This document shows positions 1 to 18,691 of a DNA stretch of 64,000 nucleotides, piece after piece. This DNA comes from Mobula birostris. Taxonomy: Eukaryota. The translations under genes and the position numbers were made by a program. Within the stretch, counting starts at the first letter, position 1. Every line of letters starts with the position of its first letter. The stretch lies in assembly GCF_030028105.1 (NCBI RefSeq), contig NC_092389.1, forward strand, positions 31,282,339 through 31,346,338, read 5' to 3'. The notes below the pieces were generated by a model that saw only the letters and a list, made by a program, of their open reading frames with translations, was not told the DNA's origin and searched no databases.

Positions 1-221
1 TGCAGACTTGACGATAATTTTGATCACACACCTTAAGCAGGTCTTGAGTTCATTGTGATGTTTGCTGACATCATGAAGTGTAACAATGGCATAGCATCAT
101 CAGATGTAACCCCTATACGACCACTTTGGGTACTGTATCAATAGCAGCTTAAATGTACGTAATAACCTGGTGGTTATTATACCTATTAATAGTTTGGTAT
201 CTCATCTACGGATCGGAAGAC

Positions 222-734
222 ATGAGCAGCACAACCACCATCCAAGACATGGACTCCAAGGATCGCAGCAGTTCCAGAGTGATGCAGCCTCCAGGTGGTG
301 AATCCAGTATCTCATTGGGGGTGGAGGAAAATGCCAAACCAGTGCATTCCCGTCCAAGCAAAACCGCATCCAATATCTTTGGGCCACCATTGCAAAATCA
401 ACCTGTGGCTAGAAGAAGGAACCCGCCAGGTGGAAAAAGTAGTGGTATCTTTCAGGCAGCTACCACTGAAACACCTGATCGAAAGCAACGGAGAAATCCT
501 CCTGGTGGCAAGGCAAGTGGCATCTTTGACATTGTGGAAATACCTCCCAAAACTCTGGATATCGCAACTGGGGAAGGTGAAAATAGCCCAGGTTCCTCCG
601 AAACTGAAAACCAAATGGAAGCCCAGGGAAAGAGAGGAGAGTGTGTGCCTGGGCCAGTAGAGTCTGCTCAACCTGAACCAGTAAGGCGCAAGAGAGTCCC
701 ACCTGGTGGATGGTCTACCATTGTGCTGGGGTAA
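222..734 (+). CDS. Jupiter microtubule-associated homolog (HN1/JPT family) protein, intronless, copy 1 (170 aa from the MSSTTT start)
   Basis: The translation has HN1-family hallmarks: MSSTTT..SSRVMQPPGG, ASNIFG, two internal RRNPPGGKxSGIF repeats and C-terminal PPGGWSTIVLG. The ATG at 222 has a purine at -3, and AATAAA lies at 771-776. JPT1 versus JPT2 cannot be resolved by eye. Confidence 0.88.
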   Translation: MSSTTTIQDMDSKDRSSSRVMQPPGGESSISLGVEENAKPVHSRPSKTASNIFGPPLQNQPVARRRNPPGGKSSGIFQAATTETPDRKQRRNPPGGKASGIFDIVEIPPKTLDIATGEGENSPGSSETENQMEAQGKRGECVPGPVESAQPEPVRRKRVPPGGWSTIVLG

Positions 735-770
735 ATCGACTGTTCAGCTCAGTGTATCAGCTGCAGACTG

Positions 771-776
771 AATAAA
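771..776 (+). promoter_or_regulatory. Polyadenylation signal of Jupiter-like copy 1 (copy 2 at 2237-2242)
   Basis: AATAAA 36 nt after the stop codon, followed by T/GT-rich sequence. Confidence 0.6.
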
Positions 777-989
777 CGTTGATTTTATTGCAACCTTAAA
801 ATTTGAGCGTCACCATTTTGTATTGACACTTTATATTTGAAGATTGATTGCGCTTATTAGATAATGCCGCAAACTGCTATTCTTCCCTAATTATGTCACA
901 TGTTTTCGTGTAGTTGCATTACCTCAATTACATTGATTTCATCTACATCACTTGTAAGACGAAAATCATCTTGTTAAAGAATAGTAATT

Positions 990-1279
990 ATCGCACGTTA
1001 TACTTTTAAACTTCTTGTTTTTCCAAGTCTATCTGCTTTTTCAGGTTTTCCTTTTCTTGGATCATAGCCTGCAGTTGTTTACTGAGACCTCGGAGTTCTT
1101 CTTCATTTGCTTCCATGTTTTCATTTTATAATCTGAATGTAGATAGTTCACTTTGCAACAAATTCCTTTTCTTTTTTTATCCTTGTAATAATTTCCTCCA
1201 TTTTCCAATCTCTTTTCCAACTCACGGTTGTTCTTGTCGGGTGCATCTATTTGTTTTTGGAGTTCTGCACATTTACCCT
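990..1279 (-). pseudogene. Decayed coiled-coil ORF of unknown origin (partial second copy at about 2450-2633)
   Basis: With frameshifts it reads KCAELQKQIDAPDKNNRELEKRLE / MEEIITRIKKEKE / LQSELSTFRL*NENMEANEEELRGLSKQLQAMIQEKENLKKQIDLEKQEV. It is E/K/Q-rich with a heptad pattern. Confidence 0.5.
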
Positions 1280-1490
1280 GGGCTTCAACCATAAAATCTG
1301 AGGATTTTCCTTAAGTTCTGAAACATATTTCTTTCATTCTTGACCATTTGCGATAGGTATACTGCCATTAAGATTCCATCTCCCCTGCCTGTGAACTGCT
1401 GGATTCTCCATTCAGCGTTTCTTTGACTTCTTTCCACCTAATTCCTTTAATATCAAGATACTTTTCTGCAGACTTGACGATAATTTTAAT
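1280..1490 (-). mobile_element. I/Nimb-type LINE: ORF1 C-terminus plus decayed start of the ORF2 AP endonuclease
   Basis: The minus strand reads IKIIVKSAEKYLDIKGIRWKEVKETLNGESSSSQAGEMES*, then IANGQE*KKYVSELKENPQIL.WLKPRV. This resembles the NARSLIANGQE...CIQETWLKP start of fish I/Nimb ORF2. Confidence 0.7.
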
Positions 1491-1687
1491 CACACACCTT
1501 AAGCAGGTCTTGAGTTCATTGTGATGTTTGCTGACATCATGAAGTGTAACAATGGCATAGCATCATCAGATGTAACCTCTATACGACCACTTTGGGTACT
1601 GTATCAATAGCAGCTTAAATGTACGTAATAACCTGGTGGTTATTATACCTATTAATAGCTTGGTATCTCATCTACGGATCGGAAGAC

Positions 1688-2200
1688 ATGAGCAGCACAA
1701 CCACCATCCAAGACATGGGCTCCAAGGATCGCAGCAGTTCCAGGGTGATGCAGCCTCCAGGTGGTGAATCCTGTATCTCATTGGAGGTGGAGGAAAATGC
1801 CAAACCAGTGCATTCCCGTCCAAGCAAAACCGCATCCAATATCTTTGGGCCACCATTGCAAAATCAACCTGTGGCTAGAAGAAGGAACCCGCCAGGTGGA
1901 AAAAGTAGTGGTATCTTTCAGGCAGCTACCACTGAAACGCCTGATCGAAAGCAACGGAGAAATCCTCCTGGTGGCAAGGCAAGTGGCATCTTTGACATTG
2001 TGGAAATACCTCCCAAAACTCCGGATATCGCAAATGGGGAAGGTGAAAATAGCCCAGGTTCCTCCGAAACTGAAAACCAAATGGAAGCCCAGGGAAAGAG
2101 AGGAGAGTGCGTGCCTGGGCCAGTAGAGTCTGCTCAACCTGAACCAGTAAGGCGCAAGAGAGTCCCACCTGGTGGATGGTCTACCATTGTGCTGGGGTAA
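1688..2200 (+). CDS. Jupiter/HN1-family protein, intronless, copy 2
   Basis: Same ORF exactly 1466 bp downstream, with no indels and 5 amino-acid differences (D>G, S>C, G>E, L>P, T>N). AATAAA at 2237-2242. Confidence 0.88.
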   Translation: MSSTTTIQDMGSKDRSSSRVMQPPGGESCISLEVEENAKPVHSRPSKTASNIFGPPLQNQPVARRRNPPGGKSSGIFQAATTETPDRKQRRNPPGGKASGIFDIVEIPPKTPDIANGEGENSPGSSETENQMEAQGKRGECVPGPVESAQPEPVRRKRVPPGGWSTIVLG

Positions 2201-2633
2201 ATCGACTGTTCAGCTCAGTGTATCAGCTGCAGACTGAATAAACGTTGATTTTATTGCAACCTTAAAATTTGAGCGTCACCATTTTGTATTGGCACTTTAT
2301 ATTTGAAGATTGCGCTTATTAGATAATGCCGCAAACTGCTATTCTTCCCTAATTATGTCACATGTTTTCGTGTAGTTGCATTACCTCAATTACATTGATT
2401 TCATCTACATCCCTTGTAAGACTAAAATCATCTTGTTAAAGAATAGTAATTATCACACGTTATACTTTTAAACTTCTTGTTTTTCCAAGTCTATCTGCTT
2501 TTTCAGGTTTTCCTTTTCTTGGATCGTAGCCTGCAGTTGTTTACTGAGACCCCGGAGTTCTTCTTCATTTGCTTCCATGTTTTCATTTTATAATCTGAAT
2601 GTAGATAGTTCAGTTTGCAACAAATTCCTTTTC

Positions 2634-3732
2634 CTTGACGATAATTTTAATTTTCTCAGTTCTTTTGCTTGTTTGCGCTGAACAATTAATTGCATCCACC
2701 ATAAAAAAGTATGAAGTCCTTTCTACTCATTAATAGTGTATCCTTGTTTTTCATATTACAGCTCTCACAATTCACCAGTTTATTATTCCCTGTATTTGTT
2801 TGCTTGACAACCTTTTTTTCTTCAAATTCTTTCACTGCCTCTGCATAACTGATTCCTTGAGTTACTTTTACATATTGTATCTCAGCTGCCTTCTTGCTAT
2901 AAATGCACCCTCGATAAGCTGCGCTGTGTTCCTTGCCACAATTGCAGCATTTCAGCCTATCTCCCACTTCACATTTCCCATATTTATGTTTTCCAATGCA
3001 TCTCCCACATCTTTGTTTTGCTCTGCAGACCGCTGCAATGTGCCCAAATTTCTGACATTTATAGCATCTTAGAAGCGGTGGTATATATATTCTAACAGCA
3101 TAACACATATACCCAAAGTAAACGTTAGTTAGCAATCTCTCTTCATCAAAGTTAATCATTACCGATAAACTATCACACCTTTTCCTGTTTCTTGTAACTT
3201 TCAAATGTTTGACCTCAATAATTTTTGCTCCTTTTCTGTTCTGTTTAATCTCATCCATAGTAACTTTTGTTGGTATCCCAGAAATAACTCCTCTAGTCCA
3301 CTTTCTATTGTTGGGTATTGAGCATTGTACTTATGTGCCGTCTATCTTACATAATCTTATCACTTTGCCTTGCTGAGCACTATCCCAACAAATCACTAAT
3401 AGCGATCCATTTCATAAAATCTTTGCTCTTTTAATCTTGCCTATAATTTTGTTGAGCATCTTCGTCAACCAAATCGGGTTCCAATCACCAAAAGACTCCT
3501 CGCTTAGTTTTATAATTACTTTAATCTCATCTTCTTTCCATTGTTTTGCTGTCCTGTTTTGATCATCCGCTGACTCCTCAGAGTTTGATATCCCGTACCT
3601 CTGCTTTCTTTTCTTCCTCTTTCCATTCCATTCCTCTTTACCGCCAACCTCCATCTCTAGTTCACTTCCACTCTCGCCAAAAACTTCCTTTAACAGCTTG
3701 GCTCTTTCCTTGATGTTCTCTCTCTCTGCCAT
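2634..3732 (-). mobile_element. Non-LTR retrotransposon (I/Nimb/Jockey group) ORF1 gag-like protein, disrupted by stops
   Basis: ORFs 3412-3771 and 2686-3258 are in frame across two stops. Motifs include NP.WLTK, GSLLVIC, RGVISGIP and three CCHC knuckles (CYKCQKFGHIAAVC, CGRCIGKHKYGKC, CCNCGKEHSAAYRGC). Confidence 0.88.
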
Positions 3733-4519
3733 TTTCCAGTCAGTCGTCTCGACCCATTGCTTCCAACACACACTCCCAGCTCATCTCTCCACGCTCAGCC
3801 AACCAAAACCGCAGCCACAGCCAGGGGCTGAATCCTGAAGGTATTTATGAAGCCAGCCCAAACGTGAATCAGTGGCCTCAACAGAAACTGGGGAAAACTG
3901 GAAAACCTGGAATAAGGAACATGGACCAGACTGTGAATCGGAATGCAGATTTCATGGACCGGACCATGACAAAGAGAGATTATTTCAACAGAACAGAATT
4001 CCAAAGTACAAACATGTTTAGAATTTTGTGCAACTGGAACAATTTGGAATTAAGAGTAAATTATTTTAGATTTTTTTTCTTCCTACTCCACGCATTTCAA
4101 CAGAAAGCTTGCAGATGAAGTTTTCTTTCCATTATAGAGGCAATATATTGGTCGAAGTATTATCTATGCGGTGGAGTGTCTGCATTGTAACATTGATGAA
4201 ATACACACAGAGCCAGTTATTGCCAAGATTCATAAGGAAACAGATGTGAGTGTGGGATGCAAGGAGCAGATGCCAAGCTGACATTTCCCCTTCTTGTGCA
4301 CATGAGCATTCCTAAAGCTCTCAGCCATAAAAACAAAGAAAGGCTTGCTTTTAAATAGCACCGCCAGCATCCAAAGGTGCTTTTAAAGTTAATTAAAGAT
4401 ACTATAATTTAAACTGGTAGACTAAAGCTCACTGCATCTTATGAACCTTTTGAACAGAAGGTGAATGAAATGACACCAATATCCTTCAATGCACTCGTAC
4501 CCACAGACACTATTGTAGG

Positions 4520-4760
4520 TATCAGATCAGCCTTCTGGAAAGCAAACTGAGGGAGGAAGGTATCTGGCTTGGATGGAGTCCTTGGCCAATCCTGTGCAGA
4601 TCAGCTGGCAGAGGTACTTTTTAATCTCTTCAATCTTGCTTTCCCCTTGTACTACCTCAATGTACTTCTGGTTTGAAATTATCTGAATGGATGGCATGAT
4701 AATTAAGTTTTTCTTTGTATCTTGGTATATATGACAATAATAAATCAATGCCAATTCCAG
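4520..4760 (+). mobile_element. Old Rex1/Babar LINE RT fragment
   Basis: Decayed DGV.G..CADQLAEV..FNL motif, similar to about 44640-44720. Confidence 0.5.
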
Positions 4761-4837
4761 TTGATGGAGTTGCACTTGTAATTATTATTATAATGTAAGA
4801 TCCAGAAACCCCGGTAAAACATTTTTGTTGTGATGAA

Positions 4838-4960
4838 GACACAAGACTCTGCAGATGCTGGAAATCTGGAGCAACACCCAAATGGAGGAGGTTAGTGTGT
4901 CAGGCAGCAACTATGGAGGGAAATAGATTGCTGACACTTTGGGTTGATACCCTTCATGGA
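4838..4960 (-). repeat. Penelope terminal-repeat fragment (degenerate hammerhead region)
   Basis: ctgcagatgctggaaatctggagcaacac...ggcagca...acccttcat is the reverse complement of the terminus at 26375-26470. Confidence 0.65.
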
Positions 4961-5484
4961 AAAAAAGGAGATAGCCAATATAAAAAGGTGGGAGAGGGCA
5001 ATAAGTGTCTCCTGGTGAGATTGTGGTGTTGATTTTGAGCCAGGAATCCACTTCTCATCTTCCTTTGCTTTCCTAAGTCATACATTATATCATTGAACTC
5101 AACCCAAAATGGAAAAGGGTGGGAGTGCTGAGGGGTGGATTTATGGTGGGGAGGCTGTTGTTAATGTTCTATCTGAACGTGGTTAAGTGTCAGCTCCAGC
5201 TGTGTTAATGTGTCAGTTCACATTTTGTGCTTAATTCTTTGGAGAGAGGCGGCCAGGTCAGAAAGCCAAGTAAACAACATGAACAAGAGTCTTTTCTTTC
5301 TTCCAGTGCTCTACAGCTGCAATGGGCAACTTACCCTGATGAAAGCAGGGGCTGGTGAGCAGAATGAATGAGACCTGTTCAAATTATCTTCACAACTGTC
5401 AGAGGGCTGCAGCCGAAAGGGGGTCAGTCAAATGCTGGGCAGTAGTTGGTGAATGTGTTGATGCTGTGCCGTGTGCGTGTACAG

Positions 5485-5975
5485 GCGGTGGGCTTATGCA
5501 GCAGGTAGTGCTGCTACCTCACAGCTCCAGGCATGTGGAAATGATTCTGACCCTGGGTTTTCTCTGTAATCCGTTGTCTTTCCTCCAGGCGCTCTGCTTT
5601 GTCTCCACATCCCAAGCAAGTGCTGATAGGTTACTTAGATATTATACATTACTCCTATTGTAGATAAATGATCACAAAGCATGAAATGGAAGCTCACTAG
5701 CAAGGGAAAATCTGCAAATGCTGGAAGTCCAGGCAACACACAAAATGCTGGTGGAACTCAGCAGGCCAGGCAGCATCTATGGAATATCTATGTAAACAGT
5801 CAACTTCTCGGACTGAGACCCTTCATCATTCCTGTGTTGCACAAAATGGAAGTTGGTGGTCATGCATGGGTTTCATGGGTACAGGGCATAAATGGAACCA
5901 AATGGGATGACTGTCCTGAACACAGCCAGGGACGTGATGGACTAAATGGTTTCCTCTGTTATTGTGAGTGTAAGG
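5485..5975 (+). mobile_element. tRNA-derived V-SINE/HE1-like SINE interrupted by a Penelope terminal fragment (about 5700-5830, minus strand)
   Basis: Head gtagtgctgctacctcacagctccagg, core ttcctccaggcgctctgctttgtctccacatccca and CR1-like tail gatggactaaatggtttcctctg. The insert is aaatctgcaaatgctgg...gagacccttcatca. Confidence 0.6.
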
Positions 5976-7254
5976 TAGGATAGTAATGCACAGACCAGTT
6001 CTCCACGGGGCAGTCCCAGCTTCTGATTGCTCACAACCTTGCCCACTATGCAGGCCATGTGAAAATGAGACCAGTCAGGACCAGATGGTCCATTAACCCT
6101 GCTACTCCTTTCAAACAGATATCCCTGCTTGCCCGCCATCTGACCTTTTCTTCACTGTCGGGGGAAACAAGGTGAAAATAGGCTCAGTGCTGGAGGTGAA
6201 ATACTTGTCATCTCGTGACATAGTTGTTGAATTATTATCCACACATCTGACCTGAAGGCATGAGTACGAATCTCAGCATACCACAGCATTGTTTGCGAAC
6301 TCTCTTTGCGAGAAGAATCTGCCAAGGTCTGGGCTATATGTGACTCTAGACCCATTAATGTGGTTGCTTCTTAACTTCCTCCACAATTCAAGGTTAATTA
6401 GGATGGGCAATAAATGCCGAAGGTGATCACATCCCACAAGTAGTTGAAAAGAATGTCCCGGCAACTGAAAAAGTATCAGGAGGTCGTGTCTATATGGTAT
6501 CACATCCTAATTCCTAACTATAACAATCCCTGTGTCAGTCAGGAACTGGCACTGATCTCTTCTAAGCTGTCCACACTAGCTGGCAGGCCATTCAGGTGAC
6601 TTAAGACACCCCAAAGGAGATAAAATGGCTCCCGACGTCCAAGTTATTCCTACTCTTATACAGCATGTAATGCCAGCTCCTACCTGACTCATTAAACTGG
6701 AAGCACCAGCATCTTGTTTGCAATTCATCCCTCTGCCAGTTCTGCAAAGTCAGTGTGGTTCTAAGGTACGTGAGCATTCAGACTGAGTATTGGGGTTCTT
6801 TCTCCAAGAATCATTCTACTAGCTCTTCTTCCATCTACTCTCTCACCCCGCCATAGTCGAAACCCTGTAGTTGGACCAGTGACCTGCACTGTGACAGGAT
6901 TTGTACTGAATGGTGCTATAAATGTGGTTAGCCTGATGTAGTTTTTTTAGAATTGTTGCAAATGAGTGATCTATGTGCAAAGACCACTAAATGCATTTGT
7001 CTCTCAACGTTCCTCAGTATCATTCCCAACTGCAAGGTGTTGGCTCCACAAGCAAGCATGAAAGCCCATTTATCTCAGTTAAATGCTGCTTGACAATGTG
7101 AGGTACACATCCCCAGTTCATATAAATAGTCTTCTGTCATCTAAAACTTCCTTGACAGGCTCAGCAAGGTTAATGAGAAAAACAGTGAGCAGTGGCACCG
7201 GGGGTGGCCCCAAGTGTCATCAGCCTATACCAGACCCATTCAAAGTTTGAATGC

Positions 7255-8741
7255 AGAGGGGATTTAAAATGTCGGTATCTACGGGTGAGGGGCTGGAGGA
7301 TTGGAGGATAGCTCATGTTGTTCCGTTCATTAAAAAAGGCTCTAAAAGTAATCTGGGAAATTATAGGCAGGTAAATTTGACATCGGTAGTAGGTAAGTTA
7401 TTGGAGAGAGTACTAAGAGACAGAATCTACAAGTATTTGGATAGACAGGGACTTATTAGGGAGAGTCAACATGGCTTTGTGCGTGGTAGGTCATGTTTAA
7501 CCAACCTATTAGAGTTTTTCGAGGAGGTTACCAGGAAAGTGAATGAAGGGAAGGCAGTAGATCTTGTCTACATGGACTTCAGAAAGGCCTTTGACAAGGT
7601 CCCGCATGGGAGGTTAGTTAGGAAGATTCAGTCGCTAGGTATACATGGAGAGGTGGTAAATTGGATTAGAGATTGGCTCAATGGAAGAAGCCAGAGAGTG
7701 GTGGTAGAGAATTGCTTCACTGAGTGGAGACTTGTGACTAGTGGTGTGCCATAGTACTGGGTCCATTGTTATTTGTCATCTATATCAATGATCTGAATGA
7801 TAATGTGGTAAATTGGATCAGCAAATTTGCTGATGAAACAAAGAGTGGACAGTGAGGAAGGTTTTCAAAGCATGCAGAGGGATTTGGACCAGCTGGAAAA
7901 ATGGGCTGAAAAATGGCAGATGGAGTTTAATACAGATAAGTGTGAGGTATTATACTTTGGAAGGACAAACCAAGGTAGAACATACAAGGTAAATGGTAAG
8001 GCACTGAGGAGTGCAGTAGAACAGAGGGATCTGGGAATACAGATACAAAATTCCCTAAAAGTGGCGTCACAGGTAGATAGGGTTATAAAGAGAGCTTTTG
8101 GTACATTGGCCTTTATAAATCAAAGTATTGAGTATAAGAGTTGGAATGTTATGGTGAGGTTGTATGAGGCATTGGTGAGGCCGAATTTGGAGTATTGTGT
8201 TCAGTTTTGGTCACCAAATTACAGGAAGGATATTAATAAGGTTGAAAGAGTGCAGAGAAGGTTTACAAGGATGTTGCCGGGACTTGAGAAACTCAGTTAC
8301 AGAGAAAGGTTGAATAGGTTAGGACTTTATTCCCTGGAGCATAGAAGAATGAGGGAAGATTTGATAGAGGTATATAAAATTATGATGGGTATAGATAGAG
8401 TGAATGCAAGCAGGCTTTTTCCACTGAGGCAAGGGGAGAAAAAAAACAGAGGACATGGGTTAAGGGTGAGGGGGGAAATGTTTCAAGGGAACATTAGGGG
8501 GGGCTTCTTCACACAGAGAGTGGTGGGAGTGTGGAATGAGCTGCCAGATGAGGAGGGAAATGCGGGCTCACTTTTAACATTCAAGAATAACTTGGACAGA
8601 TACATGGATGGGAGGTGTATGGAGGGATATGGTCCAGGTGCAGGTCAGTGGGACTAGGCAGAAAAATGGTGCAGCACAGCCAAGAAGGGCCAAAGAACCT
8701 GTTTCTGTGCTGTAGTTTTTCTATGGTTCTAATGTTCTATG
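7255..8741 (+). mobile_element. CR1 LINE, 5'-truncated ORF2 reverse transcriptase plus 3' tail
   Basis: Motifs NYRQVNLTSVVGKLLE, QHGFVRGRSCLTNL, YMDFRKAFDKVPH, SGVP, LVRPNLEYCVQFWSP and WNELP. The tail is (ttctatg)-like. Confidence 0.95.
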
Positions 8742-8914
8742 GGATTAAATGAAAGAATCTCTCATTCTGCAGTGTGGCTCTCCCACCACAGTTCCTTGTT
8801 TCCCAGTCTCCTAAAAAGCCCTGTCAGTGAGCAGGCTTGCCTGGAAGCCTGTGTGGTGTTACCCAGTGCCCTGTCCCTGGACAAGGTGAGATAGCAGCTT
8901 GAAAAGGAAATGCA

Positions 8915-9290
8915 GATCAGATCAGACTTATTTATCACATGTACTGTAGATAGTAAAACATGCAGTGAAACACATTGTTTCCACTAACAACCAACACATT
9001 AAAGGATGTGCTGTGGAGAGCCACCAAGTGTCACCACCCATTCTGGCGCCAACATAGCATGCCCACAATGTTCAACACAACAATAGCACAACACACAGCA
9101 CACAGCAACATTAGCAGCATCATCAACAATAACAGAATGAAACAAGACAACAGCAGCAAAACAAGACCCTTCCCACCTTCACACACCCAAGCCTCTAACC
9201 CCAGGGCAGATCACCTTCAGGCCTCCATCCCTTGGCCCCGGACTCTGAAACTCGCAGACAAACTGCCACAGCTTACCACTAAGACAAGCC
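8915..9290 (-). repeat. Non-autonomous interspersed repeat with (TCTGA)n tail; related copies at about 13135-13330 (minus) and 42090-42385 (plus)
   Basis: The block atttatcacat..aaacat..gaaacacatt.ttt.ca.taacaaccaaca is shared among the copies. Confidence 0.55.
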
Positions 9291-10344
9291 CTCATGTGGC
9301 AGAGCCCCCTTCAGTAATGAAACACATTCGTCCCATCCAGGCCTGTTAAACACATCGCAGTCATTTTTGCTCTTTAATCATTCAACACAAGATTCCTTTT
9401 ATAACTCTTCAGCTCACTTGGCTTGACCAGACTTGGGCTGGCTACCCATCGGAGTCTGAGCAGAGCACTGTAATATTGAAGCTTGACACCCTGCAGTTTC
9501 TACTCAACTGATTTAACAATGTACTTCAGCAATCTATTTGTTTTATAGCTGATCCAGAGTGATTTGACATGTTAAATATCAAGTGTACTATCAGCCCAGA
9601 CCTGTTTCCACTTCAATTGCGATTTCTACATCATCCTTTGTACAAGTATTTGACCATTTTTCATTCTAATGGGCAATCCTTTCACTTGCCTCTATTAAAT
9701 TTTATCTCTAGCTGTAGTTCATTTCTAGCTTTTATCTAACTCCTTTTGCAAATCCCTGACTGCTTCAGTCTGTCACAAAACCCTTTCAAACTTTTGGCTG
9801 CAGATTTATATTGTCCCAAATCCAGAAAGGAAGGTCAATTTCCATAGTGTGTTTCGTGATGATCCAGAGACTTTTAATCTGCAGTCAATACTATAATGTA
9901 AGAAACACCAACAAAATGGAAACAACATAATAGCATACTTCTTACAACACAATACAAAAAACAACATGACTTCATTTCTAGTAGAACTATATCCAATGCA
10001 ATACTTTGTCTTCTTTGGTAATCCTTTCAGATTAAGGATGACTTGCTTCCATTCTAAATTTACAGGTTCTGTGATTGAGGATGCCATTGTGTTTGCTTCT
10101 GTTTGCTTCCAATGCAAGGCTCCCAGTGCTATCTCCAAATGCTTCTTCTGCCCATCAATCACCGGGATTTTGTGCTTTTCCAAGGAAGTTTGATCTTTTT
10201 TCGCTCTTTCACCTGGAAGATGGTGCCACGCTTGGTCACAACAGCCTGTCTAGGCCCAATGAATGGGGCAATTGTGTCTCTTAAGCATTTGTCTTTTGAT
10301 TGCAAGTTGAACATTGGAAATATAAAGTACTGCAAGTCCGGTTC

Positions 10345-10785
10345 ATTGGTGAGACCGATGGCAGGGGAGCTGCGTGGCTTTGGTTATTTTGTGGACCAAG
10401 CCCTCATGCCACGACATCTTGTGTTACAGCCACCCAGGACAGCTCTCCCACCAATGCTGCTCTCCAGTGTTCACTCTGTGGAAGACAGGCTGGATTGCGT
10501 TTGTCTGCGGCTGACCAAGGAAGAGGTGAGGAATTGCTCTGTACTTGTTCTTGCAGAAACATGGCTTCAGGACAACATCCATGCACCATCAAGCTTCAGG
10601 CCATGCCACTCAGGAACTTGTGCTAAAGTAATTTTTTGTGATGATATGTGCTATTATAAATATACATGCTGTGTGTATGCACTGACTGTATATACTGCGA
10701 TTTGTACCTTGGCCATAGAGAAAAGTTGTTTTGTTTTACTGCTTTACATGTGTATGTTTGAATGACAATTACACTTGAACTTGAC
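10345..10785 (+). mobile_element. Internally deleted Rex1/Babar element: AP endonuclease N-terminus joined to a 3' tail
   Basis: LPPMLLSSVHSVEDRLD...RNCSVLVLAETWL matches the LPSILLANVRSL..LTETWL motif. It ends in gaatgacaattacacttgaacttga. Confidence 0.65.
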
Positions 10786-12429
10786 ATCTCTTCCTGTGAC
10801 AGAATCCAGAGTAGAATCTGCATTTTAGGAGACTGGTGAGAGACTCTGAATGACATAACCAACCCAAAAGAACCAGCAAACAGAGACTCTGGAAATGTTC
10901 GCCCAGAAGAACATGCTAATACTGGTTTTCATATACTACCAGTGAATTTAGAGGATTTTGTGGCACCTTTCCAGTGCCCTGAGGTGTCTGCATTAGGTAA
11001 TCCCGGTCTCAGTAGAGCACTGGTGCCAAGTTGACAATATATTTTTGGCCGGGATTGAGAACTTGATTTTCACATACCTCTTTCAAAGTTCAAAGTAAAT
11101 TTATTAACAAAGTACATATATGTCACCATATGCAACCCTGAAGTTCATTGAGGGCATATGAATCCCCTTTCTCAATTCACCAAAGGCAGTGGTAAATTTC
11201 ATCATCGACTTCTGCTTAAAGTAAGTCGTATCTACTGTGAAAGGACTGTTCCACGCTTTCTCCTGTGTCACTCCAAATAATTCCATTATTGGGTGATCAT
11301 ATTGTTAAATGCTATAGGGCAGTTGAGAACCTTTCTCTTGCAGATGTTGGATGCAATGCCCACCCTTTTGTTAGCTTCAGTGAAAAAAGCCTACAATAGG
11401 CTCTGAGTGCACACAATTGCAAGTGTTGTTTGCACACAGTGGCTGAACTAATGAGGTTGGGGAGACATTAGTTCTGAAGTCTAGTCTCTGAAGGTGGAAC
11501 AGTCCTGCATAAATTCTGGTGATTGACAACACTCATGGGAAGTTTGATGGAGATGAGATACAGTGATGCGGCAAAATAGATCTTAAAAAAATTTAGGCAA
11601 CAATGCAGCTTTCTATGACAGAAGCCTTCATGGGGATTTGCTCTGTTAGTTAGGATCATGACTCACGTACACCATTGAGCAAATGTAAGATGGTGTTGAG
11701 TTTCCGTTGACAGCTGAATTTGATGAGAATACTTCATGGAGTCAAAGGCTTTAGTGAGGTGAAAAAGCCATGTTGAGTGGTTGATGCTGTTTTGGGGGAA
11801 GAGATCTTTGAGCATGCAAGAAGACGGTTAACTTTCCCTGTGGTAACATCAATGAGACCAGTCTTCTTTTCAGATGATCATGATTACAACATCTCCTCTT
11901 ACCAGATGTGGATAATAGGATTTTTGATTCATGACTAAATCCATTATCGCAATGCAATTCAAATGTGAACCTCAGGAGGAGCAACGCTGTTTATTTTTCA
12001 CAGTTGCCTGTGGTTTCTGGTGATCACAACCAAGGCGATAACCAAGGATGAGGAAAAGTTTTCTGCTGAAATGGAACTTAGTTCACCAAGGTAATACAAT
12101 GATCATGGGTGGTGGGTGCAGCTAATATTTCCAACAAATCAAATTTGCAAAAGCAATTCGAAAACTGAATTCGTAATACAGTTTCAGAGCAGATTCCTGG
12201 AGTTAAGTAGCCTGGAGAATAACGGACTAACTTAGATCCTGCCTTGTGTGGTAAAACAGGATTAGCCATTCATCTAATTTTGCAGGATTCCCTGTAGAAG
12301 AACAAATATAATACAATGCAATTTACATTGAGATAGAGAGTGACTCACTCAATGTCAATGTTAAGAATAATAAACTTACCGTTGAATGCAATTACATGGG
12401 TATGGGGATGGGTTGTTGTGAGTTGTAAG

Positions 12430-13750
12430 TAATTTGAGAAATTAGATTAAAATGATCAGTTTTAAATAATTGCTTTCTAATTGTATACATTAGCTTGAAA
12501 AATAAAAGCATCATGGTTAAAATAGTCCATTCCTGGTTGACTAAAGAGTTACAGAAGTGAAAGCTAATAAGCTAGAAGATTAAGAGAGTTTTAGAAGCCA
12601 CTGATTAAAAAAACTAGAAAGAGCAATGAAATAAAATAAGCATGAACCAGCCAAATATAAGAAGCAAAACATGCTGCAAGAGCTTCCTCAAATACCCCAA
12701 AAGGAAAAGAGAAGCCAAAGTTAGCCTAATTCTGCTCTTATGTCTTATGGTCTGGTGGCACTTTGTGAAATGAAGGAAGAAGACAATAAGAGATGGTAGT
12801 CTTGTTAACTTGACATCAGTTGCAGTGAAGCTGCTACAATCCATTCTTAAAGAAGTGTTAACAGGGCATTGGGAAAGATATATATGATTAGGCAGAGTCA
12901 ATATGGTTTTACAAAAAGGAAATTGTGCATGACAAGTCTAATAGAGTCTTTTGTAGGGCATAACAGAATGTAATAGAATTGGATCTGCATTGATAAGGCA
13001 ACACACAGGGCTCGCAGGGACAGTGTAATATGGATTAGAGATTGCTTAATGAGAACAACAGGAAGCAAGAATAAATGAGTCGTTTCCTGGTGTTGAAAGT
13101 GGCTCAGCTATTTTCAGTCCGTATCAATGACAGGTGAATCAGATTCAGGTTCATTTATTAATCACACATACATCAAAACATAGAATGAAACACATTATTT
13201 GCATTAACAACCAACATAAGCTAAGAATCTATGAGGGGCAGCTGAAAAGTGCCTCCAGTGGATTCAGACTCGCAGACATTGGGCCTCTGACTTCTCCGGT
13301 GGACTCAAAGACCCAGGCTGATGAGAGACCTGTAAACCCCAGTGTTCAGAGGAATGCCGATGTCCTCGTAGACAAAATCCAAAAAACTGAAAGTAATCCA
13401 AAAGCAAAATGTTACCTATCTGAAATAAAACAAATGCTGAAAACATTACAACAGTCAGGCAGAATTTGTGATGAAAGTGGCATAGTTAAAATTTCTTACA
13501 ACAGTTTGTCAACCTGAAACATTAGCTGTTCTTCTCTCTATATAGATACTGACTGACTTGGTGAGAATATTCAGCATTCTCCAACTTCATTTTGCAAAGT
13601 GAACAGAGGTAAAGGAAGTGTCAGATTTTATTGCATGGTTGTTTGGAGAGCACAAACAATAGCATTACTGAAAGATGCACCTGGTATCTGTTGAAGAAAG
13701 GATACATGCTTCGGCTGTGATGTACTGTAGATTCACAAGATTGTTTGAAT
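12430..13750 (+). mobile_element. Highly decayed CR1 LINE with later insertions
   Basis: Remnants of vnltsv.vkll.sil, qygftkgklcmtsli and miglepyllle-like CR1 segments. Confidence 0.5.
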
Positions 13751-15174
13751 TAGAGGTCCATGCTCCCTGCTGATCTTTGGCATAAGGGCCAATTTACCTT
13801 TTATGGCTGTGCCAATGTTATCTAACTGAAAGCCACTTCACTACTAACTGGTTAAGGCAGTGCTTGGTGAGAGGCACTATGTAATGTAATGGTGTCATGT
13901 AGTCAAGTCAGGATGGACATAGTCTCCGAACAGCGAAATAGAACTTTAATGACTGTCAAAGTCAAACCACCAGATATCTCACCAGCTGTCCAACCAATCA
14001 AGGATTTTGGATTCTTCTGAATATTCCTAACATTTGAGACAATTAAACATCAATTGTTCAATTGCAAATATTACATTTATTAAAATTTTAATAAAATAAA
14101 TGTATAAATGCAAAAATACTTGACCAATTAACTTTTAACTAAATTCAGCAAGTTAAAAGGTAATGCAAATTAATGTAACTTTTCTCCTTCATAGCTGCTT
14201 TAAATAGAATTGCTTGTGCAGAAGGTCTAATGTGGTACAGATTGGGGGGGTTTTATATTTCTCATTATTGTTACTGGGGAAATTGAGCAAGCTTGAGATC
14301 TGCCACTGGATATCATAAGTACAAGACCAGAGTGCAGTAGACAACTGAGTGCTTTGTCTTCCATTGGCAGGGTGGTGGATGGGGTCCCATCTCTCTAACA
14401 CTTGTGGGGTGATAAAGGCTAACAATATTGCATGGAACCTCTGGGCAAGTTAAAGCAGGTTTTAGCCGTTTTGTATTCTGAGAATGTCTTGAAGGGTGGA
14501 TGTTGTGAGTGTTCTCATAAAGTTGTGGAGATTTATAACTTCCAAAAAAGTCCTTTGGCCCATCAAGTCTGCACAATCATTATGCACCCATCTATCCTAA
14601 TCTTATTTTAATTGCCTCCTTGTTTTCCATATTCTGTCAGAGAAACTGGAACAGGACGGCGGTGGGGTATTTAAAATGAGATTTGTATAGATGGGTAACC
14701 TCAGGTTAGCTGCATAAAACGGAGATATGGAACAATTTCTTCAGTGAGTGAATTGTAAATCTTCGGAATTCTCTGCCTCTGAGAGCTGCCGATGCTCAGT
14801 TACTGTGTAAATTTGAACCTGAGAAGATATATAGATGGATTCCGATGTGGATCAGGAGATGTAGGAAGAAAGGACGAAACTGGACGAGTTGACGGATCAG
14901 CTTCAAAATTGAATGGTAGAGCTACAGGTCCTTTTTCTGTTCTCACTTCATATCCTCTTGCACTTCTGTTTAATGTGAAACTAACCCTTTGAGTAATGTG
15001 GAATGATCTTTGCAGGTAAGGAGTTGATGGATGGATAATGTCTAGCAGGTCTAAGATGACCACAGCTTGACATTGAGTATACCTTTGCAACCACCAAGAG
15101 TTAAGCCATTCAAGAAACTTTCTCAGCTTCTAGGGGATGAGGGATACAGAGCAAACTCTCCCTTCTACTCTGAA

Positions 15175-15715
15175 AATCAATCAGAATCAGAATTAGATTT
15201 ATGAACACTATAACATATAATGAGAAATTTGTTATTTTGTGCAGCAGTGCAGAGCAACAAGACATAAGATTTAAAAAAATTACAAAATAAATAAACAGCG
15301 CAGAAATGAACAATGAGATTGCATTCATGGGTTCATGGACTGTTCAGAAATCTAATCACAGAGGGGAAGAAGTTGTTCCTAAATAGTTAAGCATGGGTCT
15401 TTCGGCTCCTGCACCTCCTCCCAGTTGATAGTAATGAGAAGAAGGCATGCCCCAGGTGTTAGATGGCTCTGAGTGATGAATGCTGTCTTCTTGAGAAACC
15501 AGTTCTTAAAGACGTCCTTGATAATGGGGAAGGTTGTACCCAAGATGGAACTGGAGGCTACAACACTCTGGGGACTCTTGTGATTCTGTGCATTACAGCT
15601 TCCATGCCAGGTAGTGATGCAACAGTCAGAATGCTCTCCACCATATATCCATAGTAATTAGGTGACATACCAAATGTCATCACATTCCTAATGAAATACA
15701 CATTGATGACATTTA
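15175..15715 (-). mobile_element. Rex1/Babar 3' end
   Basis: (tcagaa)n tail and gaggggaagaagttgttcct..ggctcctgcacctcct, which is the reverse complement of about 37470-37545. Confidence 0.75.
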
Positions 15716-15856
15716 ACGACAAGGGTTCCTGTTCAACCACTTGATAAAAATAATTCTCATTTAAAGAAGCAAATTTATTCCTGATGTTCAGGTGCAATGC
15801 TATTTATCCAGGGAATAAAACCTATATTAGAACATCTCAGTCCACAAATTCTGCCT

Positions 15857-15950
15857 TGCTGAAGGACCTTAGCCTGAAACATCGACTGTACTCTTTTCCA
15901 TAGCTGCTGCCTGGCCTGCTGAGTTCCTCCAGCATTTTGTGTGTGTTCCA
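15857..15950 (+). repeat. Penelope terminal-repeat fragment
   Basis: gctgaaggaccttagcctgaaacatcgactgtac...gctgcctggcctgctgagttcctccagcattttgtgtgtg. Confidence 0.75.
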
Positions 15951-17513
15951 CAAATTCCAGCCCAGGTCAAAACTATTATCCTGTCAGACAAGTGTGAGAC
16001 TGTCGTACTAAATGTACTTAATGCTCTTCAACTAGTGCCTTGATTTAGTACAATCTTGAAAGGGCACAGACAGCGAAATACTTTTAGAAATAAGGCCCCG
16101 AGAAGCTGAAGCAAAAGCAAATGAAAATGCATTGTGATGTTGGATGAAATTGGGAACTTTAGATCAGTTTTAGAGGGTAATGATTTTTCAGTTTATTGGA
16201 TGGTAAATTTTCTCCTGGGTCTTTGAATATGATAAAATAGCAATATAACAGGATATGTACAATTGGATTAGAGGATGTAACAGAAGATATAAAATATTAA
16301 TAGGAAAATGACACCACAGGAATGGTTTAAGCTTTTTGCCTGATGTGCTTGAATTTCAGGAATGTGAATAAAGGTGGTCAGAGGAATAGTAGTTGAAATG
16401 CAGTAAATAAACCACAGTGATAACAAACAGTGTTCAGTCAACAATAAACAGCGTAATGGTGTGCCGTTTGTACTTTGCCAGAATCACTGGCTCCAGAAAT
16501 GATCACAGACAAAATTGGACCAAAGAGCTGACTACCAGATGTGAGGGGAAAGTGACTGCCACTGGTATCAGTGGGCATCAAGAAGCTCAGTGGAAAATGC
16601 AGTTAGTGGAAAGCATTAGAATAACAAGCAATGGGACAGTCCTATTTCCCATAAAGGAAGCTGGTTATAGTTGATGAAGATCAATCATCTCAGCCTCAGG
16701 ACATCATTAGACACATCCAGTGTCTAAGGTCCAACCATCTAGTTTTCCTCCCATTGTGAAGTCAAATGTAGAGATCATTGCACAATATATAATCTTATTT
16801 ACAAACCCTCATCAAATGAAGCAGCCTATGCTTGCATGCAACCAAGTCTATGCATCATTCAGGAACAGACTGAAAAGTGGCAAATGACAGAGGCAAGGAT
16901 GACTTCTAAAAAGAGATGATCCAACTACTTATCAAGTCTAATCTCTTCTTAAGGATATTTAGGGATGGGAAAAAAATTTGGCCTTGACAGTGTGGCTTAT
17001 CTCCCATTAAAGTAAGTGTACACTGACTATATACGTTACTATACGGTGCTTATTAGGTCCATGAGAGTATATTGTCAGAATTTCATGCACCACCAGATGT
17101 GTTTGATGCATTTTATACTACATTTGGATGCAGTGTATATGCCACCTATACACAGTATATACTGTATGCTTAGTACATATGCTGTCAGCCTGTGTGCAGT
17201 TTGTATAACAGAATGTTTACTTGTAAAATTGCTTTGGAAAAGGATGGAGGAAGTGTAATATTTTACATGTTCTTGCTGTATTGTCCTCAAGCAGGACAGT
17301 CTTAAACCTTTGATTTGAAATACTTACTGGACTTCAATGAGGCACTTAACAAGTCTGCAAGTAAGTTGCCTTTTCAATAATGCATTAAATAATGTTCTTA
17401 CACTGAACTCTCCAGGTGTTCCCTCAAGTAAGCTGGTTACACAGAATAAATTAGATTATTTCCAGCATGTGAGGATATTTCTCAAAGTAACAGCCATTGT
17501 GTTGACATATCAA

Positions 17514-18691
17514 TAGTACTGAAAGTCGTAGGCACAAATATATAACAAGGGTGCCTAAGACTTTTGCACAGTACTGTATTTGTCAACATGGATTGGAGAG
17601 CAAGTTTGTAAACCTGGTGGGAGGAAAGGATGTTGTGAATGGTAAGACTGGAGAGGTGTGGGACAGGTGACAGAGAAGGAGTGCCAGGGCCAGGGCTTGG
17701 TGCAGACACCCAGCCCTGAGACACAAGGCAAAATCATTTGATTCCAAACAATTGGTTTATTGATCATTACAGAATGTCTCTCTGGTGTTCCCCCACCCTC
17801 CCCTTTCCCTTACCCTTTTCCGAACCATTGATTCCCCTCTCTGTGCACCCCTTCCCACACTCAGTCCACAACAAATAACCACATCAAAATCAGGTTCATT
17901 ATCACTCACATATGTCATGAAATTTGTTTTTTTTTTGCCGCAATACCGTGCAATATATAAAATTACTATAGTGCTGTGCTAAAGTCTTAGGCACCTTAGC
18001 TATATATAGGCAGGAGGAGAAGATGGCAGCACAACGCAGCGCGCGTGGCTCTCCGGTGAAATGATATTGTATCTGTTAAATAGGGGCCATGGACAATTCT
18101 GATTTGATGGAGACAGACGTGAAAGCACAGAGGAACATCTGGAGAAACTTCTGAAATGCCGGTTCGCTGCCGCCATTACTGTGCGATCGAGAATCTTCTG
18201 GAGGGAAGGCCCCAAAACCCCCGGCTTTGCCTGCTGCTGGCGACCGAGGCTGAGGTCGAAGCGTTCGGATAGAGATGGTGCTCGGTACTCAGTGTCGGAG
18301 GGCTGATCAGAGCTCGAAGTTTTCGGACGACTCAGAGTCGGACTGTGGTTGGGCATGGCAGGGAGAGTTTTCTTCCTTCTCCCGTCTGCGTGAGATGTGG
18401 GACATTTGAGAGACTTTGAACTTTTTTTACTGTGCCATGGCCTGTTCTTCATCAAGTTATGGTATTGTTGCACTGTTGCAACTATATGTTATAATTATGT
18501 GGTTTTTGTTAGTTTTTCAGTCTTGGTTTGTCCTGTGTTTCTGTGATATCACACCGGAGGAATATTGTATCATTTCTTAATGCATGCATTACTAAATGAC
18601 AATAAAAGAGGACTGCGTGTCCTCATAATCTAATAATCTACTCTAATGTATATATATATATATGTGCCGAAGACTTTTGCACAGGATGGTA
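17514..18691. mobile_element. Tc1/mariner-type non-autonomous composite with TIR-TIR hairpin ends
   Basis: TIR consensus CAGTACTGTGCAAAAGTCTTAGGCAC at 17514-17535 and 17967-17994, and inverted at 17551-17578 and 18664-18691. TA dinucleotides flank the ends. Confidence 0.75.
18009..18645 (+). mobile_element. Young CpG-rich non-autonomous retroelement inserted in a (TA)n tract
   Basis: Starts with aagatggcagc (YY1-like, as at Rex1-type 5' ends) and ends aataaaa...taatctaataatcta. It is flanked by tatata on both sides and has many intact CpGs. Confidence 0.6.

What the first reader, a model, noticed from the sequence alone, without database searches (positions are those of the whole stretch)
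1..3860. Intact, intronless Jupiter/HN1 gene tandemly amplified inside an I/Nimb LINE
Seen in sequence: two open, indel-free 170-codon Jupiter-family ORFs, each with AATAAA, in a 1466-bp unit. The unit also holds the LINE ORF1 end and ORF2 start plus a decayed coiled-coil ORF, all antisense to Jupiter. The rest of LINE ORF1 lies directly right of the array. Established: vertebrate JPT1/JPT2 are multi-exon genes for microtubule-associated proteins, and JPT2 is an NAADP-binding partner of two-pore channels. Inference: a non-autonomous LINE derivative replaced its ORF2 with host-gene cargo and amplified. The cargo stayed open while neighbouring TE frames decayed, which may reflect a selected, lineage-specific gene family.
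Basis: partly seen in the sequence, partly recalled or inferred. Interest (0 to 1): 0.85.

Follow-up and report, generated by a model that had tools for sequence, protein, structure and literature searches.

The report
Manta-ray Jupiter retrogene, tandemly duplicated
Two intact, intron-free copies of a small microtubule-protein gene sit head-to-tail in a manta ray chromosome as part of a devil-ray-specific gene family, but local DNA duplication, not a jumping element carrying them as cargo, most likely made the copies.

Summary
Two open 170-codon Jupiter/JPT ORFs (222-734, 1688-2200) lie in a 1466-bp head-to-tail repeat that is 98% identical. Antisense to them is a gag-like LINE ORF1.

The window is Mobula birostris (sMobBir1). 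The ORFs belong to a Mobula-only clade of 13 intact proteins, and RefSeq already lists 12 of them as predicted 'jupiter homolog 1/2-like' proteins. The clade is sister to the multi-exon gene jpt1b, which lies on another chromosome, so the copies are retrogenes.

The LINE-cargo reading is not supported:
- The LINE-like part is a high-copy ORF1-only element of about 2 kb. Its homology stops at 849, in a short AATC tail.
- Jupiter lies outside that element and is roughly 30-200 times less abundant in contigs.
- All 9 M. hypostoma and all 3 M. birostris database copies map to one chromosome each.
- The '18-bp junction repeat' is six ORF1 codons at a tandem-duplication breakpoint.

Selection is unresolved. 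pN/pS is 0.51 on only 8 changes, and substitutions ignore conserved sites. Yet a neutral stem lineage would stay open only about 1-9% of the time. Expression is not shown, and no testis RNA exists.

An earlier scan note on other DNA of this genome describes the same ORF1-only element.

The parts
1..24 (-). End of the previous repeat unit: 6 nt plus the 18-nt stretch (7-24) that encodes ORF1 residues IKIIVK on the minus strand. This is the tandem-duplication breakpoint.
   Evidence: 17 of 18 nt identical to 1473-1490 and 2634-2651. (relatives P0039 and P0041 carry ...RIKII(V/K)K(S/A)A.KYLD... near their C-terminus).
25..221 (+). Low-copy upstream flank of Jupiter copy 1. A pyrimidine-rich tract and AG acceptor at 191-192 are used by a RefSeq model of a sister copy.
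   Evidence: P0026 residues 27-40 map to 195-236; its first 26 aa are not in the window. (similar only to 1491-1687). (contigs 1491-1679 and 1650-1830 at depth 44-46, not repeat-level).
222..734 (+). Jupiter/JPT1b-like retrogene copy 1: 170 codons plus stop. It is identical to a protein held in the NCBI collection (P0023).
735..848 (+). Truncated 3' UTR of copy 1 with AATAAA at 771-776. No poly(A) remnant. GATT/AATC unit at 842-849.
   Evidence: (a 416-nt RNA? contig, probably the parent mRNA, matches the equivalent of copy 2 up to 2307 and then runs on unlike for 169 nt). (the 4-bp indel is one GATT unit).
849..1490 (-). 3' part of a high-copy ORF1-only LINE derivative: ORF1 C-terminus (1490-1371), putative ORF2 start (ATG at 1411, to about 1250), heptad-like 'coiled-coil' frames (1310-1009), and the 3' end at 849.
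Evidence: bins 801-1600 at depth 2,275-4,994 in X1 and 3,045-7,985 in X5; contigs of X18 and X20 stop matching at 849..
1491..1687 (+). Upstream flank of Jupiter copy 2.
1688..2200 (+). Jupiter retrogene copy 2: 170 codons plus stop. It has 5 aa differences from copy 1. This exact protein is not in the collection.
2201..2310 (+). Truncated 3' UTR of copy 2, with AATAAA at 2237-2242.
2311..2633 (-). Repeat 3' part of unit 2. It lacks about 300 bp (unit positions about 1171-1472: ORF1 end, ORF2 start and part of the heptad region), with a 3-nt CTT microhomology at the deletion.
2634..3972 (-). 5' part of the same LINE derivative: about 200 nt of leader and a gag-like ORF1 with three CCHC-type knuckles, broken by frameshifts (3771-3412 and 3258-2686).
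   Evidence: (depth 4,850-11,834 in X1; repeat contigs end at 3971/3972; a single-copy contig spans 3942-4665).

Best explanation
This is a devil-ray-specific retrogene family derived from jpt1b (JPT1/HN1-like).

Proposed history (order inferred):
1. A processed copy of jpt1b mRNA landed on another chromosome, after the mobulid lineage split from stingrays.
2. Its 3' UTR was cut short where the 3' end of a high-copy, roughly 2-kb ORF1-only LINE derivative now abuts it, tail to tail.
3. A 1466-bp segment (retrogene plus the 3' 0.64 kb of that repeat) was duplicated head-to-tail at the DNA level. One breakpoint lies inside the repeat's ORF1.
4. Further local or segmental duplication spread copies along a single chromosome in both Mobula species.
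5. One unit later lost about 300 bp.

The LINE fragment is a passenger of the amplicon, not its vehicle.

The copies encode small, probably disordered JPT-like proteins. They mostly keep the PPGG repeats but have diverged fast from the parent. My estimate is about 55% that at least some copies are expressed and kept open under weak or altered constraint, and about 45% that they are young unconstrained copies that have not yet broken.
For: Species and family. The window ORF at 222-734 is an exact NCBI protein on a 67,879,566-bp sequence shared with two M. birostris 'jupiter homolog 1-like' proteins. All 9 of 9 M. hypostoma relatives lie on one 49,647,550-bp sequence. The parent jpt1b lies on a 64,433,735-bp sequence.

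Tree. All 13 retro rows form one clade (100/100) with a stem of 0.19. The clade is sister to Mobula jpt1b (80/75) and sits inside the myliobatiforms (100/98).

Retrocopy status. Orthologue isoforms show parental coding introns. The 170- and 171-aa isoforms differ by one Ser at codon 16, and four isoforms diverge after '...PGS' at about codon 125. The window reads through both sites.

Repeat versus gene. Summed contig depth is 10-16 in single-copy flanks, 37-90 over Jupiter and 1,598-11,834 over the repeat in X1, with the same pattern in the other species (X5). Repeat contigs stop matching at 849 and at 3972. ORF1 relatives read across the 18-nt stretch, so it is repeat sequence and not a junction motif.

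Real paralogues. The units differ by 19 substitutions, a 4-bp indel and a roughly 300-bp deletion. A 387-nt contig of the other species spans repeat/18-nt/Jupiter (1444-1830) at depth 32.

Kept open? Under simulated neutrality, 23-27 aa changes without a stop or frameshift occur in 1-9% of runs.
Against: - DNA-level spread beyond this array is therefore inferred from chromosome restriction alone.
- The repeat-Jupiter junction is multi-copy and shared between species. A mobilised composite would also produce that.
- One same-species contig stops matching exactly at the 18-nt/Jupiter border (1491), so some copies may have another left flank.
- No poly(A) tail or target-site duplication of the retrocopy is visible.
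- Against function: pN/pS between the two copies is 0.51 on 5 and 3 changes, and ORF divergence (1.56%) equals flank divergence (1.36-2.15%).
- Stem changes hit 11 of 94 orthologue-invariant sites and 12 of 76 variable sites (p=0.50). Within-family variable sites number 22 of 94 and 15 of 76 (p=0.58).
- The same-species RNA? run had no contig over 201-800 or 1601-2000.
Confidence: 0.72

Rival explanations
1. One reading: a non-autonomous LINE replaced its ORF2 with an antisense Jupiter cargo, and the composite amplified by retrotransposition.
For: The repeat is an ORF1-only LINE derivative. The repeat-Jupiter junction is multi-copy and present in both species (X5 contig 1444-1830 at depth 32). 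An antisense intronless gene could ride in a LINE transcript.
Against: - Repeat homology ends at 849, next to an AATC unit, so Jupiter is outside the element.
- Jupiter depth is roughly 30-200 times lower than repeat depth.
- 9 of 9 and 3 of 3 family proteins lie on one chromosome per species. With a 3.48-Gb genome, chance for eight further random insertions on the same 49.6 Mb is about 2e-15 (my arithmetic).
- The local structure is a head-to-tail duplication with a breakpoint inside ORF1, with no tail or target-site duplication between units.
Confidence: 0.07
2. The copies are unconstrained processed pseudogenes that were duplicated passively and have simply not yet acquired a disabling mutation. 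The RefSeq models are then homology-driven predictions.
For: - pN/pS is 0.51 on 8 changes, and the ORF is no more conserved than its flanks.
- Substitutions are blind to sites invariant in 11 orthologues.
- Some M. hypostoma copies alter PPGG motifs.
- No RNA contig lies over most of the ORF in the same-species RNA? run.
- The annotation used protein alignments as well as RNA-seq (passage read).
Against: - A neutral stem with 23-27 aa changes stays open in only 1-9% of simulations.
- 13 of 13 known copies are 170 codons with no indel, although the ascertainment favours intact ones.
- The 9 annotated intact copies already match the rough contig-depth multiple in M. hypostoma.
- The RNA donors were females without testis, so silence there says little.
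Confidence: 0.4
3. The tandem duplicate is an assembly or haplotype artefact.
For: The repeat touches the window's left edge. The best DNA run (X1) may be the sample the assembly came from, so it is not independent.
Against: - The units are 2% diverged and differ by a roughly 300-bp deletion.
- An exact 258-nt contig of copy 1 (568-825) has depth 67 against 10-16 for single-copy DNA.
- The family and its junction exist in a second species.
Confidence: 0.02

Closest known systems
JPT1/HN1 (jupiter microtubule associated homolog 1b) of cartilaginous fishes
   Same: 170 aa, collinear without gaps, and 84% identical to Mobula jpt1b. The PPGG-type repeats and the C-terminal PPGG...LG are kept.
   Different: The coding sequence is a single exon and lies on another chromosome. 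It is multi-copy. The stem branch is 0.19 against about 0 for the parent, with changes at 11 sites that are invariant in 11 orthologues.
Retrocopies later multiplied by segmental duplication (e.g. LCORL retrocopies in equids, PMC10249811; search listing and start of abstract only)
   Same: An RNA-mediated copy of a host gene followed by DNA-level multiplication.
   Different: Here the unit is only 1.47 kb, is arranged head to tail, and drags a LINE fragment along. The family is shared by two species that diverged about 20 My ago.
ORF1-only non-autonomous LINE derivatives (such as mammalian HAL1; recalled, from no call)
   Same: The flanking repeat has a leader, a full gag-like ORF1, only the first codons of ORF2 and a short 3' region. 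It is present in very many copies.
   Different: Its gag is of the CCHC I/Jockey/X-element type, not L1 type. It carries heptad-like sequence of unknown origin.
LINE 3' transduction and gene-carrying chimeric retroelements (recalled, from no call)
   Same: Host sequence physically joined to LINE sequence and present in several copies.
   Different: The host gene lies outside the element's 3' end, is antisense, is far rarer than the element, and is confined to one chromosome.

Membership tests
Jupiter/JPT (HN1) protein family | Significant full-length similarity to annotated JPT proteins | tested here: met
   22 proteins at E<=0.001 among 60 candidates; every one of the 22 carries a Jupiter/HN1-family name; 84.1% and 81.2% identity to jpt1b over 170 aa.
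Jupiter/JPT (HN1) protein family | Pfam PF17054 (JUPITER) at or above its gathering score | tested here: not met
   copy 1 scores 18.6 bits against a cutoff of 27 (E=0.0014), and copy 2 has no hit. Of the 19 closest database relatives (cartilaginous-fish rows), 10 carry PF17054 and 9 do not. The profile is simply weak on this lineage.
Processed retrogene | Lacks introns that the parent gene has | tested here: met
   Parental introns are inferred from isoforms: a one-Ser difference at codon 16, and alternative ends or a retained insert after about codon 125. The window ORF is continuous across both sites. The parent's DNA itself was not seen.
Processed retrogene | Located away from the parent gene | tested here: met
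   the parent lies on a 64,433,735-bp sequence and the retro copies on a 67,879,566-bp sequence.
Processed retrogene | Poly(A) remnant and target-site duplication | tested here: not met
   there is no A-run after the 3' UTR. The UTR ends against the repeat at 845-849, and the left flank is replaced by the duplication junction. These marks may have been lost.
LINE-borne cargo (composite retroelement) | Cargo lies between the element's termini | tested here: not met
LINE-borne cargo (composite retroelement) | Copies dispersed over chromosomes | tested here: not met
   9 of 9 (M. hypostoma) and 3 of 3 (M. birostris) proteins are each on one chromosome-sized sequence.
I/Jockey/X-element-type LINE ORF1 (gag-like, CCHC) | Homology to gag-like ORF1 proteins with CCHC knuckles | tested here: met
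   12,130 hits at E<=0.001; of the 120 listed, 3 carry transposon names (X-element, jockey, Gag-like), a few carry unrelated names, and the rest are unnamed, uncharacterised or hypothetical. Pfam zf-CCHC scores 18.3 bits, below its 20.8 cutoff.
Nimb clade specifically | Placement by reverse-transcriptase phylogeny | not testable with these tools
   The element has no RT, and no TE reference library was available. 'Nimb' is the label used by the first readers.
Tandem (DNA-level) duplication | Head-to-tail units with one novel junction, and units diverged like paralogues | tested here: met
   period 1466, 98.04% identity, and a junction between the 18-nt ORF1 stretch and the Jupiter flank at 24|25 and 1490|1491.

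The most novel reading that the evidence does not exclude
The Jupiter copies are a functional, fast-evolving ampliconic retrogene family. They would be confined to one chromosome that may be one of the myliobatiform sex chromosomes (X1 or X2). That would make them a cartilaginous-fish counterpart of the multi-copy, germline-expressed gene families of mammalian sex chromosomes.

What is known so far:
- The host chromosomes are 49.6 and 67.9 Mb.
- The X1 and X2 of the two studied myliobatiforms span 45.0-73.0 Mb (passage read; Table 2 is not held).
- sMobBir1 chromosome 20 is an unrecognised X2.

I could not link the sizes to chromosome names.
Probability: 0.12. Interest if true: 0.65.

Novelty: new member of a known kind. 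Interest (0 to 1): 0.33.

Why it matters
The locus is a clean example of how a retrogene becomes a gene family: one RNA-mediated copy, then DNA-level tandem and segmental duplication that drags a transposon fragment along. It also shows how such an array can be mistaken for a transposon carrying a host gene.

The family is specific to manta and devil rays. It has at least 13 intact members across two species and is changing much faster than its strongly conserved parent. RefSeq already lists 12 of the 13 as predicted proteins, but I found no paper that mentions them. The Mobula genome preprint has 0 occurrences of jupiter, JPT or HN1. None of the 30 papers listed holds JPT1, HN1 or the gene's full name.

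If the copies prove to be expressed, for instance in testis, or to be sex-linked, they would be a rare documented young gene family in cartilaginous fishes. If not, this is ordinary retrocopy turnover.

Tried and rejected
Searches that gave nothing:
- TRF found nothing because the period exceeds its limit.
- Rfam found no family in 1-6000 at E<=1. ARAGORN found no tRNA in 4500-6200.
- Sensitive blastn of the repeat's 3' part, the Jupiter upstream flank and 3973-4700 against the window found only themselves and their tandem partners.
- Pfam on six stop-free pieces of 849-1490 gave only sub-threshold coiled-coil-type matches (best E=0.011). The ESM Atlas gave no usable hit for the 82-aa piece. 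The 'coiled-coil' part and the ORF2 start therefore stay unidentified.
- Pfam on 9 relatives of ORF1 showed zf-CCHC in 3 and PRE_C2HC in 1, and neither RT nor endonuclease in any.

Ideas considered and dropped:
- The repeat inserted into the retrocopy's 3' UTR, with the rest of the UTR beyond 3972. This is not supported. The presumed parent-mRNA contig has 169 nt that fit nowhere in 1-6000, and RNA depth over 4001-4600 is 0.
- The 23-residue hydrophobic extension from the ATG at 153 is a real N-terminus. I rejected this as probably a pyrimidine tract before the AG acceptor.

Chromosome identity. I tried to name the host chromosome from two preprints. Sizes per chromosome are in tables or supplements that are not held, so sex linkage is untested.

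Papers, and what I saw of each:
- 10.64898/2026.10.27.761883: outline, sections 16 and 22, and passages.
- 10.1101/2025.02.26.637739: passages only.
- All others: search listings only.

Caution on depth. The depth figures are sums over Logan contigs. The tool itself says they are not copy numbers, so I use them only as orders of magnitude.

Full report
WHAT IS THERE. The + strand carries two ORFs, 153-734 and 1619-2200. Each is 170 codons from the ATG at 222 or 1688. Each is followed 37 nt after its stop by AATAAA, at 771-776 and 2237-2242. Positions 1-1174 and 1467-2636 align at 98.04% with one 4-bp indel, giving a period of 1466. TRF missed the repeat because its longest period is 500. No further copy lies in the 64 kb, and the window has no N. 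The repeat runs into the window's left edge, so only two units can be counted here.

WHOSE GENE. The 170-aa product finds 22 proteins at E<=0.001 among 60 candidates. All 22 are named Jupiter/HN1-family proteins, and 19 are from cartilaginous fishes. The copy-1 protein is, letter for letter, a protein held in the NCBI collection on a 67,879,566-bp sequence. That sequence also carries two Mobula birostris 'jupiter homolog 1-like' proteins. The copy-2 protein is not in the collection. The window is therefore from the manta assembly sMobBir1, which NCBI labels M. birostris and a 2026 preprint calls M. yarae.

Nine distinct M. hypostoma relatives were found, seven in one 90% cluster and two in another. 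All nine lie on a single 49,647,550-bp sequence. The conventional gene jpt1b (170 aa, identical in the two Mobula species) lies on a different sequence of 64,433,735 bp. It is 84.1% and 81.2% identical to the two window ORFs, with no gap.

In a maximum-likelihood tree of 25 rows, the 13 'retro' rows form one clade (100/100) on a stem of 0.19 changes per site. The clade is sister to Mobula jpt1b (80/75), whose own branch is about 0. It sits inside the stingray/devil-ray group (100/98). I dropped only the extra 35 N-terminal residues of model P0026 from that analysis.

RETROCOPY. I could not read the parent's DNA, but orthologue isoforms reveal coding introns. The 170-aa and 171-aa isoforms differ by one Ser at codon 16, which I read as a tandem splice acceptor. 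Four isoforms (P0013, P0014, P0015, P0036) diverge or carry an insert right after '...PGS' at about codon 125. The window ORFs read straight through both places. That, together with the different chromosome, makes a processed retrocopy the natural reading.

A poly(A) remnant and a target-site duplication are not visible. The gene is not necessarily intron-free, though. A RefSeq model of a sister copy (P0026, 205 aa, whose ATG is changed) splices an upstream exon onto the AG at 191-192. Its residues 27-40 map to 195-236, and its first 26 residues are not in the window. The 23 hydrophobic residues upstream of the ATG at 222 are therefore probably a pyrimidine tract, not protein.

THE LINE-LIKE REPEAT. 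On the minus strand, 3771-3412 and 3258-2686 encode a gag-like protein with three CCHC-type knuckles. An exhaustive search with the 190-aa piece gave 12,130 hits at E<=0.001, typically proteins of about 390-400 aa. Of the 120 relatives listed in a named database, 3 carry transposon names: 'Nucleic-acid-binding protein from transposon X-element', '...from mobile element jockey' and 'Gag-like protein'. A few carry unrelated names, and the rest are unnamed, uncharacterised or hypothetical. This supports an I/Jockey/X-element-type ORF1. 'Nimb' itself needs an RT tree, and the element has no RT.

Full-length relatives end with '...NCSAQ...RIKIIVKSAEKYLD...'. It is simply the ORF1 codons IKIIVK. To its right at 2652 and beyond, ORF1 continues normally. 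To its left in the unit (1472-1371), ORF1 ends normally. So the repeat is collinear as 3972...2634 followed by 1472...849.

After the ORF1 stop there is an overlapping ATG at 1411 with a WNLNG-type motif. That looks like the start of an endonuclease, but the evidence is two pieces of 25 and 28 aa that Pfam does not recognise. Then come heptad-like frames with only sub-threshold coiled-coil matches and no Atlas hit.

HOW ABUNDANT IS EACH PART. I laid Logan contigs of four runs on 1-6000 at 90% likeness or more. The runs were a DNA run of the same species label (X1, possibly the assembly's own sample), a DNA run of a second species (X5), and one 'RNA?' run of each species. Summed contig depth in X1:

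- single-copy flanks (4001-4600 and 5001-5400): 10-16
- Jupiter ORF of copy 1 (201-800): 37-90
- Jupiter ORF of copy 2 (1601-2200): 9-52
- repeat part 801-1600: 2,275-4,994
- repeat part 2201-4000: 1,598-11,834

X5 gives the same picture: 5-14, 21-49, 3,045-7,985 and 2,075-18,942. The tool warns that these sums are not copy numbers, so I use them only as orders of magnitude. The repeat is present in hundreds of copies or more, and the Jupiter segment in a handful.

Contigs of the repeat family from two runs stop matching at 849 and then run on unlike the window. At the other end they stop at 3971/3972, where a single-copy contig (3942-4665, no mismatch, depth 9) takes over. At 842-849 the + strand has GATT twice in copy 1 and once in copy 2, so the only indel between the units is one AATC unit on the repeat's strand. 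That resembles a short LINE tail. The element is thus about 1.96 kb (3972-2634 plus 1472-849).

WHY NOT LINE CARGO. There are four reasons.

1. Jupiter lies outside the element's 3' end.
2. Jupiter is roughly 30-200 times rarer than the element.
3. All 9 of 9 and 3 of 3 family proteins map to one chromosome per species. With a 3.48-Gb genome, eight further random insertions on the same 49.6 Mb would have a chance of about 2e-15 (my arithmetic).
4. The local structure is what a plain tandem duplication A-B-C to A-B-B-C gives. The unit is [Jupiter flank + ORF + truncated UTR, 25-848] plus [repeat 3' part, 849-1490]. The one novel junction joins the 18-nt ORF1 stretch to the Jupiter flank at 24|25 and 1490|1491. 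There is no tail or target-site duplication between units.

The unit next to the ORF1 body later lost about 300 bp (unit positions about 1171-1472), with a CTT microhomology.

ORDER OF EVENTS (inferred). A 416-nt contig of the same-species RNA? run has depth 226. It matches 2066-2307 with 22 other letters (91%) and then runs on for 169 nt that fit nowhere in 1-6000. Its divergence fits the parent's C-terminal differences, so it is probably jpt1b mRNA. If so, the retrocopy's 3' UTR once went further and is now cut off at the repeat's 3' end. The AATAAA at 771 would then be internal to the parental UTR, not the site at which the retrocopied mRNA ended.

The junction of repeat, 18-nt stretch and Jupiter is also present in the second species. 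A 387-nt contig lies fully on 1444-1830 with 20 mismatches at depth 32. The amplicon therefore predates or spans the species split, put at about 20 My in the preprint. A 167-nt same-species contig (184-350, 14 other letters) reads F7, R8, G9 and L10. That matches the older M. hypostoma lineage P0002/P0032, so that lineage exists in the manta too.

IS IT AN ARTEFACT? That is unlikely. The units differ by 19 substitutions, one indel and a roughly 300-bp deletion. An exact 258-nt contig of copy 1 (568-825) has depth 67. A second species has the family and the junction.

SELECTION AND EXPRESSION. Results point both ways.

Against constraint:
- The two ORFs differ by 5 non-synonymous and 3 synonymous changes (pN/pS 0.51, far too few to test).
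- The ORF (1.56%) is no better conserved than the upstream flank (1.36%) or the repeat part (2.15%).
- Of 23 changes fixed on the stem, 11 hit the 94 sites that are invariant in 11 orthologues and 12 hit the 76 variable sites (Fisher p=0.50).
- Sites that vary within the family are 22 of 94 and 15 of 76 (p=0.58).
- Some M. hypostoma copies change PPGG motifs.

For constraint:
- 13 of 13 known copies are 170 codons without an indel, but only intact copies become database proteins.
- In 2,000 simulated neutral histories per setting, reaching 23-27 amino-acid changes without a stop happened in 29-38%. With indel-to-substitution ratios of 1:19 to 1:10 (bracketing what I saw), the joint chance of staying open is 1-9%.

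Expression is not shown. The same-species RNA? run has no contig over 201-800 or 1601-2000. The other species has one 173-nt contig (2122-2294, 6 other letters) at depth 3, which could be DNA carry-over. Both RNA donors were adult females, and no testis was sampled (passages read). Silence there therefore says little.

WHAT IS KNOWN. RefSeq already lists 12 of the 13 clade members as predicted proteins.

- The Mobula genome preprint has 0 occurrences of jupiter, JPT or HN1.
- The one paper that holds both 'Mobula' and 'retrogene' is about the Greenland shark.
- None of the 15 papers listed (of 21 matching) contains JPT1 or HN1.
- None of the 15 listed contains the gene's full name.

Supplementary tables of both preprints, which hold chromosome sizes and gene lists, were not available and might bear on chromosome identity. 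The nearest described pattern I found is segmentally duplicated LCORL retrocopies in equids (PMC10249811, listing only).

VERDICT. It is wrong about the LINE carrying and amplifying the gene. The finding is a new member of a known kind: a retrogene multiplied by DNA-level duplication.

Noticed in passing
window 849-1490 and 2311-3972 (minus strand): A roughly 2-kb ORF1-only LINE derivative: leader, gag-like CCHC ORF1, a few ORF2 codons, heptad-like sequence of unknown origin and a short AATC tail. It is present at very high contig depth in both Mobula species.
   Followed up: partly
window 4801-5000 and 5601-5800: Two copies of an extremely abundant short repeat, with summed contig depth of about 45,000 and 1,100,000 in X1. 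Many contigs 'skip' the 870 bp between them, probably through cross-matching of the two copies. No tRNA-like head was found by ARAGORN.
   Followed up: partly
window 7251-8657 (+) and 36522-37202 (+): Reverse-transcriptase ORFs of other LINEs (Pfam RVT_1, E=4e-18 and 1.5e-17). They are unrelated to the ORF1-only element.
   Followed up: no
window 30507-31754 (-): A 415-aa ORF with DUF4371 (E=8e-10). From memory this domain is typical of hAT/ZMYM-type transposase-derived proteins.
   Followed up: no
window 45185-45805 (+): A 206-aa ORF with a marginal ALKBH8_N match (24.4 bits against a cutoff of 21). From memory this is often seen in LINE ORF2 tails.
   Followed up: no
window 26375-26412: An earlier first-reader note (s1-896149) reports a minimal hammerhead ribozyme in a Penelope terminus here. 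I did not examine it.
   Followed up: no
P0026 (RefSeq model of a sister copy, not in this window): Its start codon is changed (ATG to a Thr codon). The model instead borrows a 26-residue upstream coding exon that is absent from this window. That hints at a recruited 5' exon or promoter, or at a prediction artefact.
   Followed up: partly
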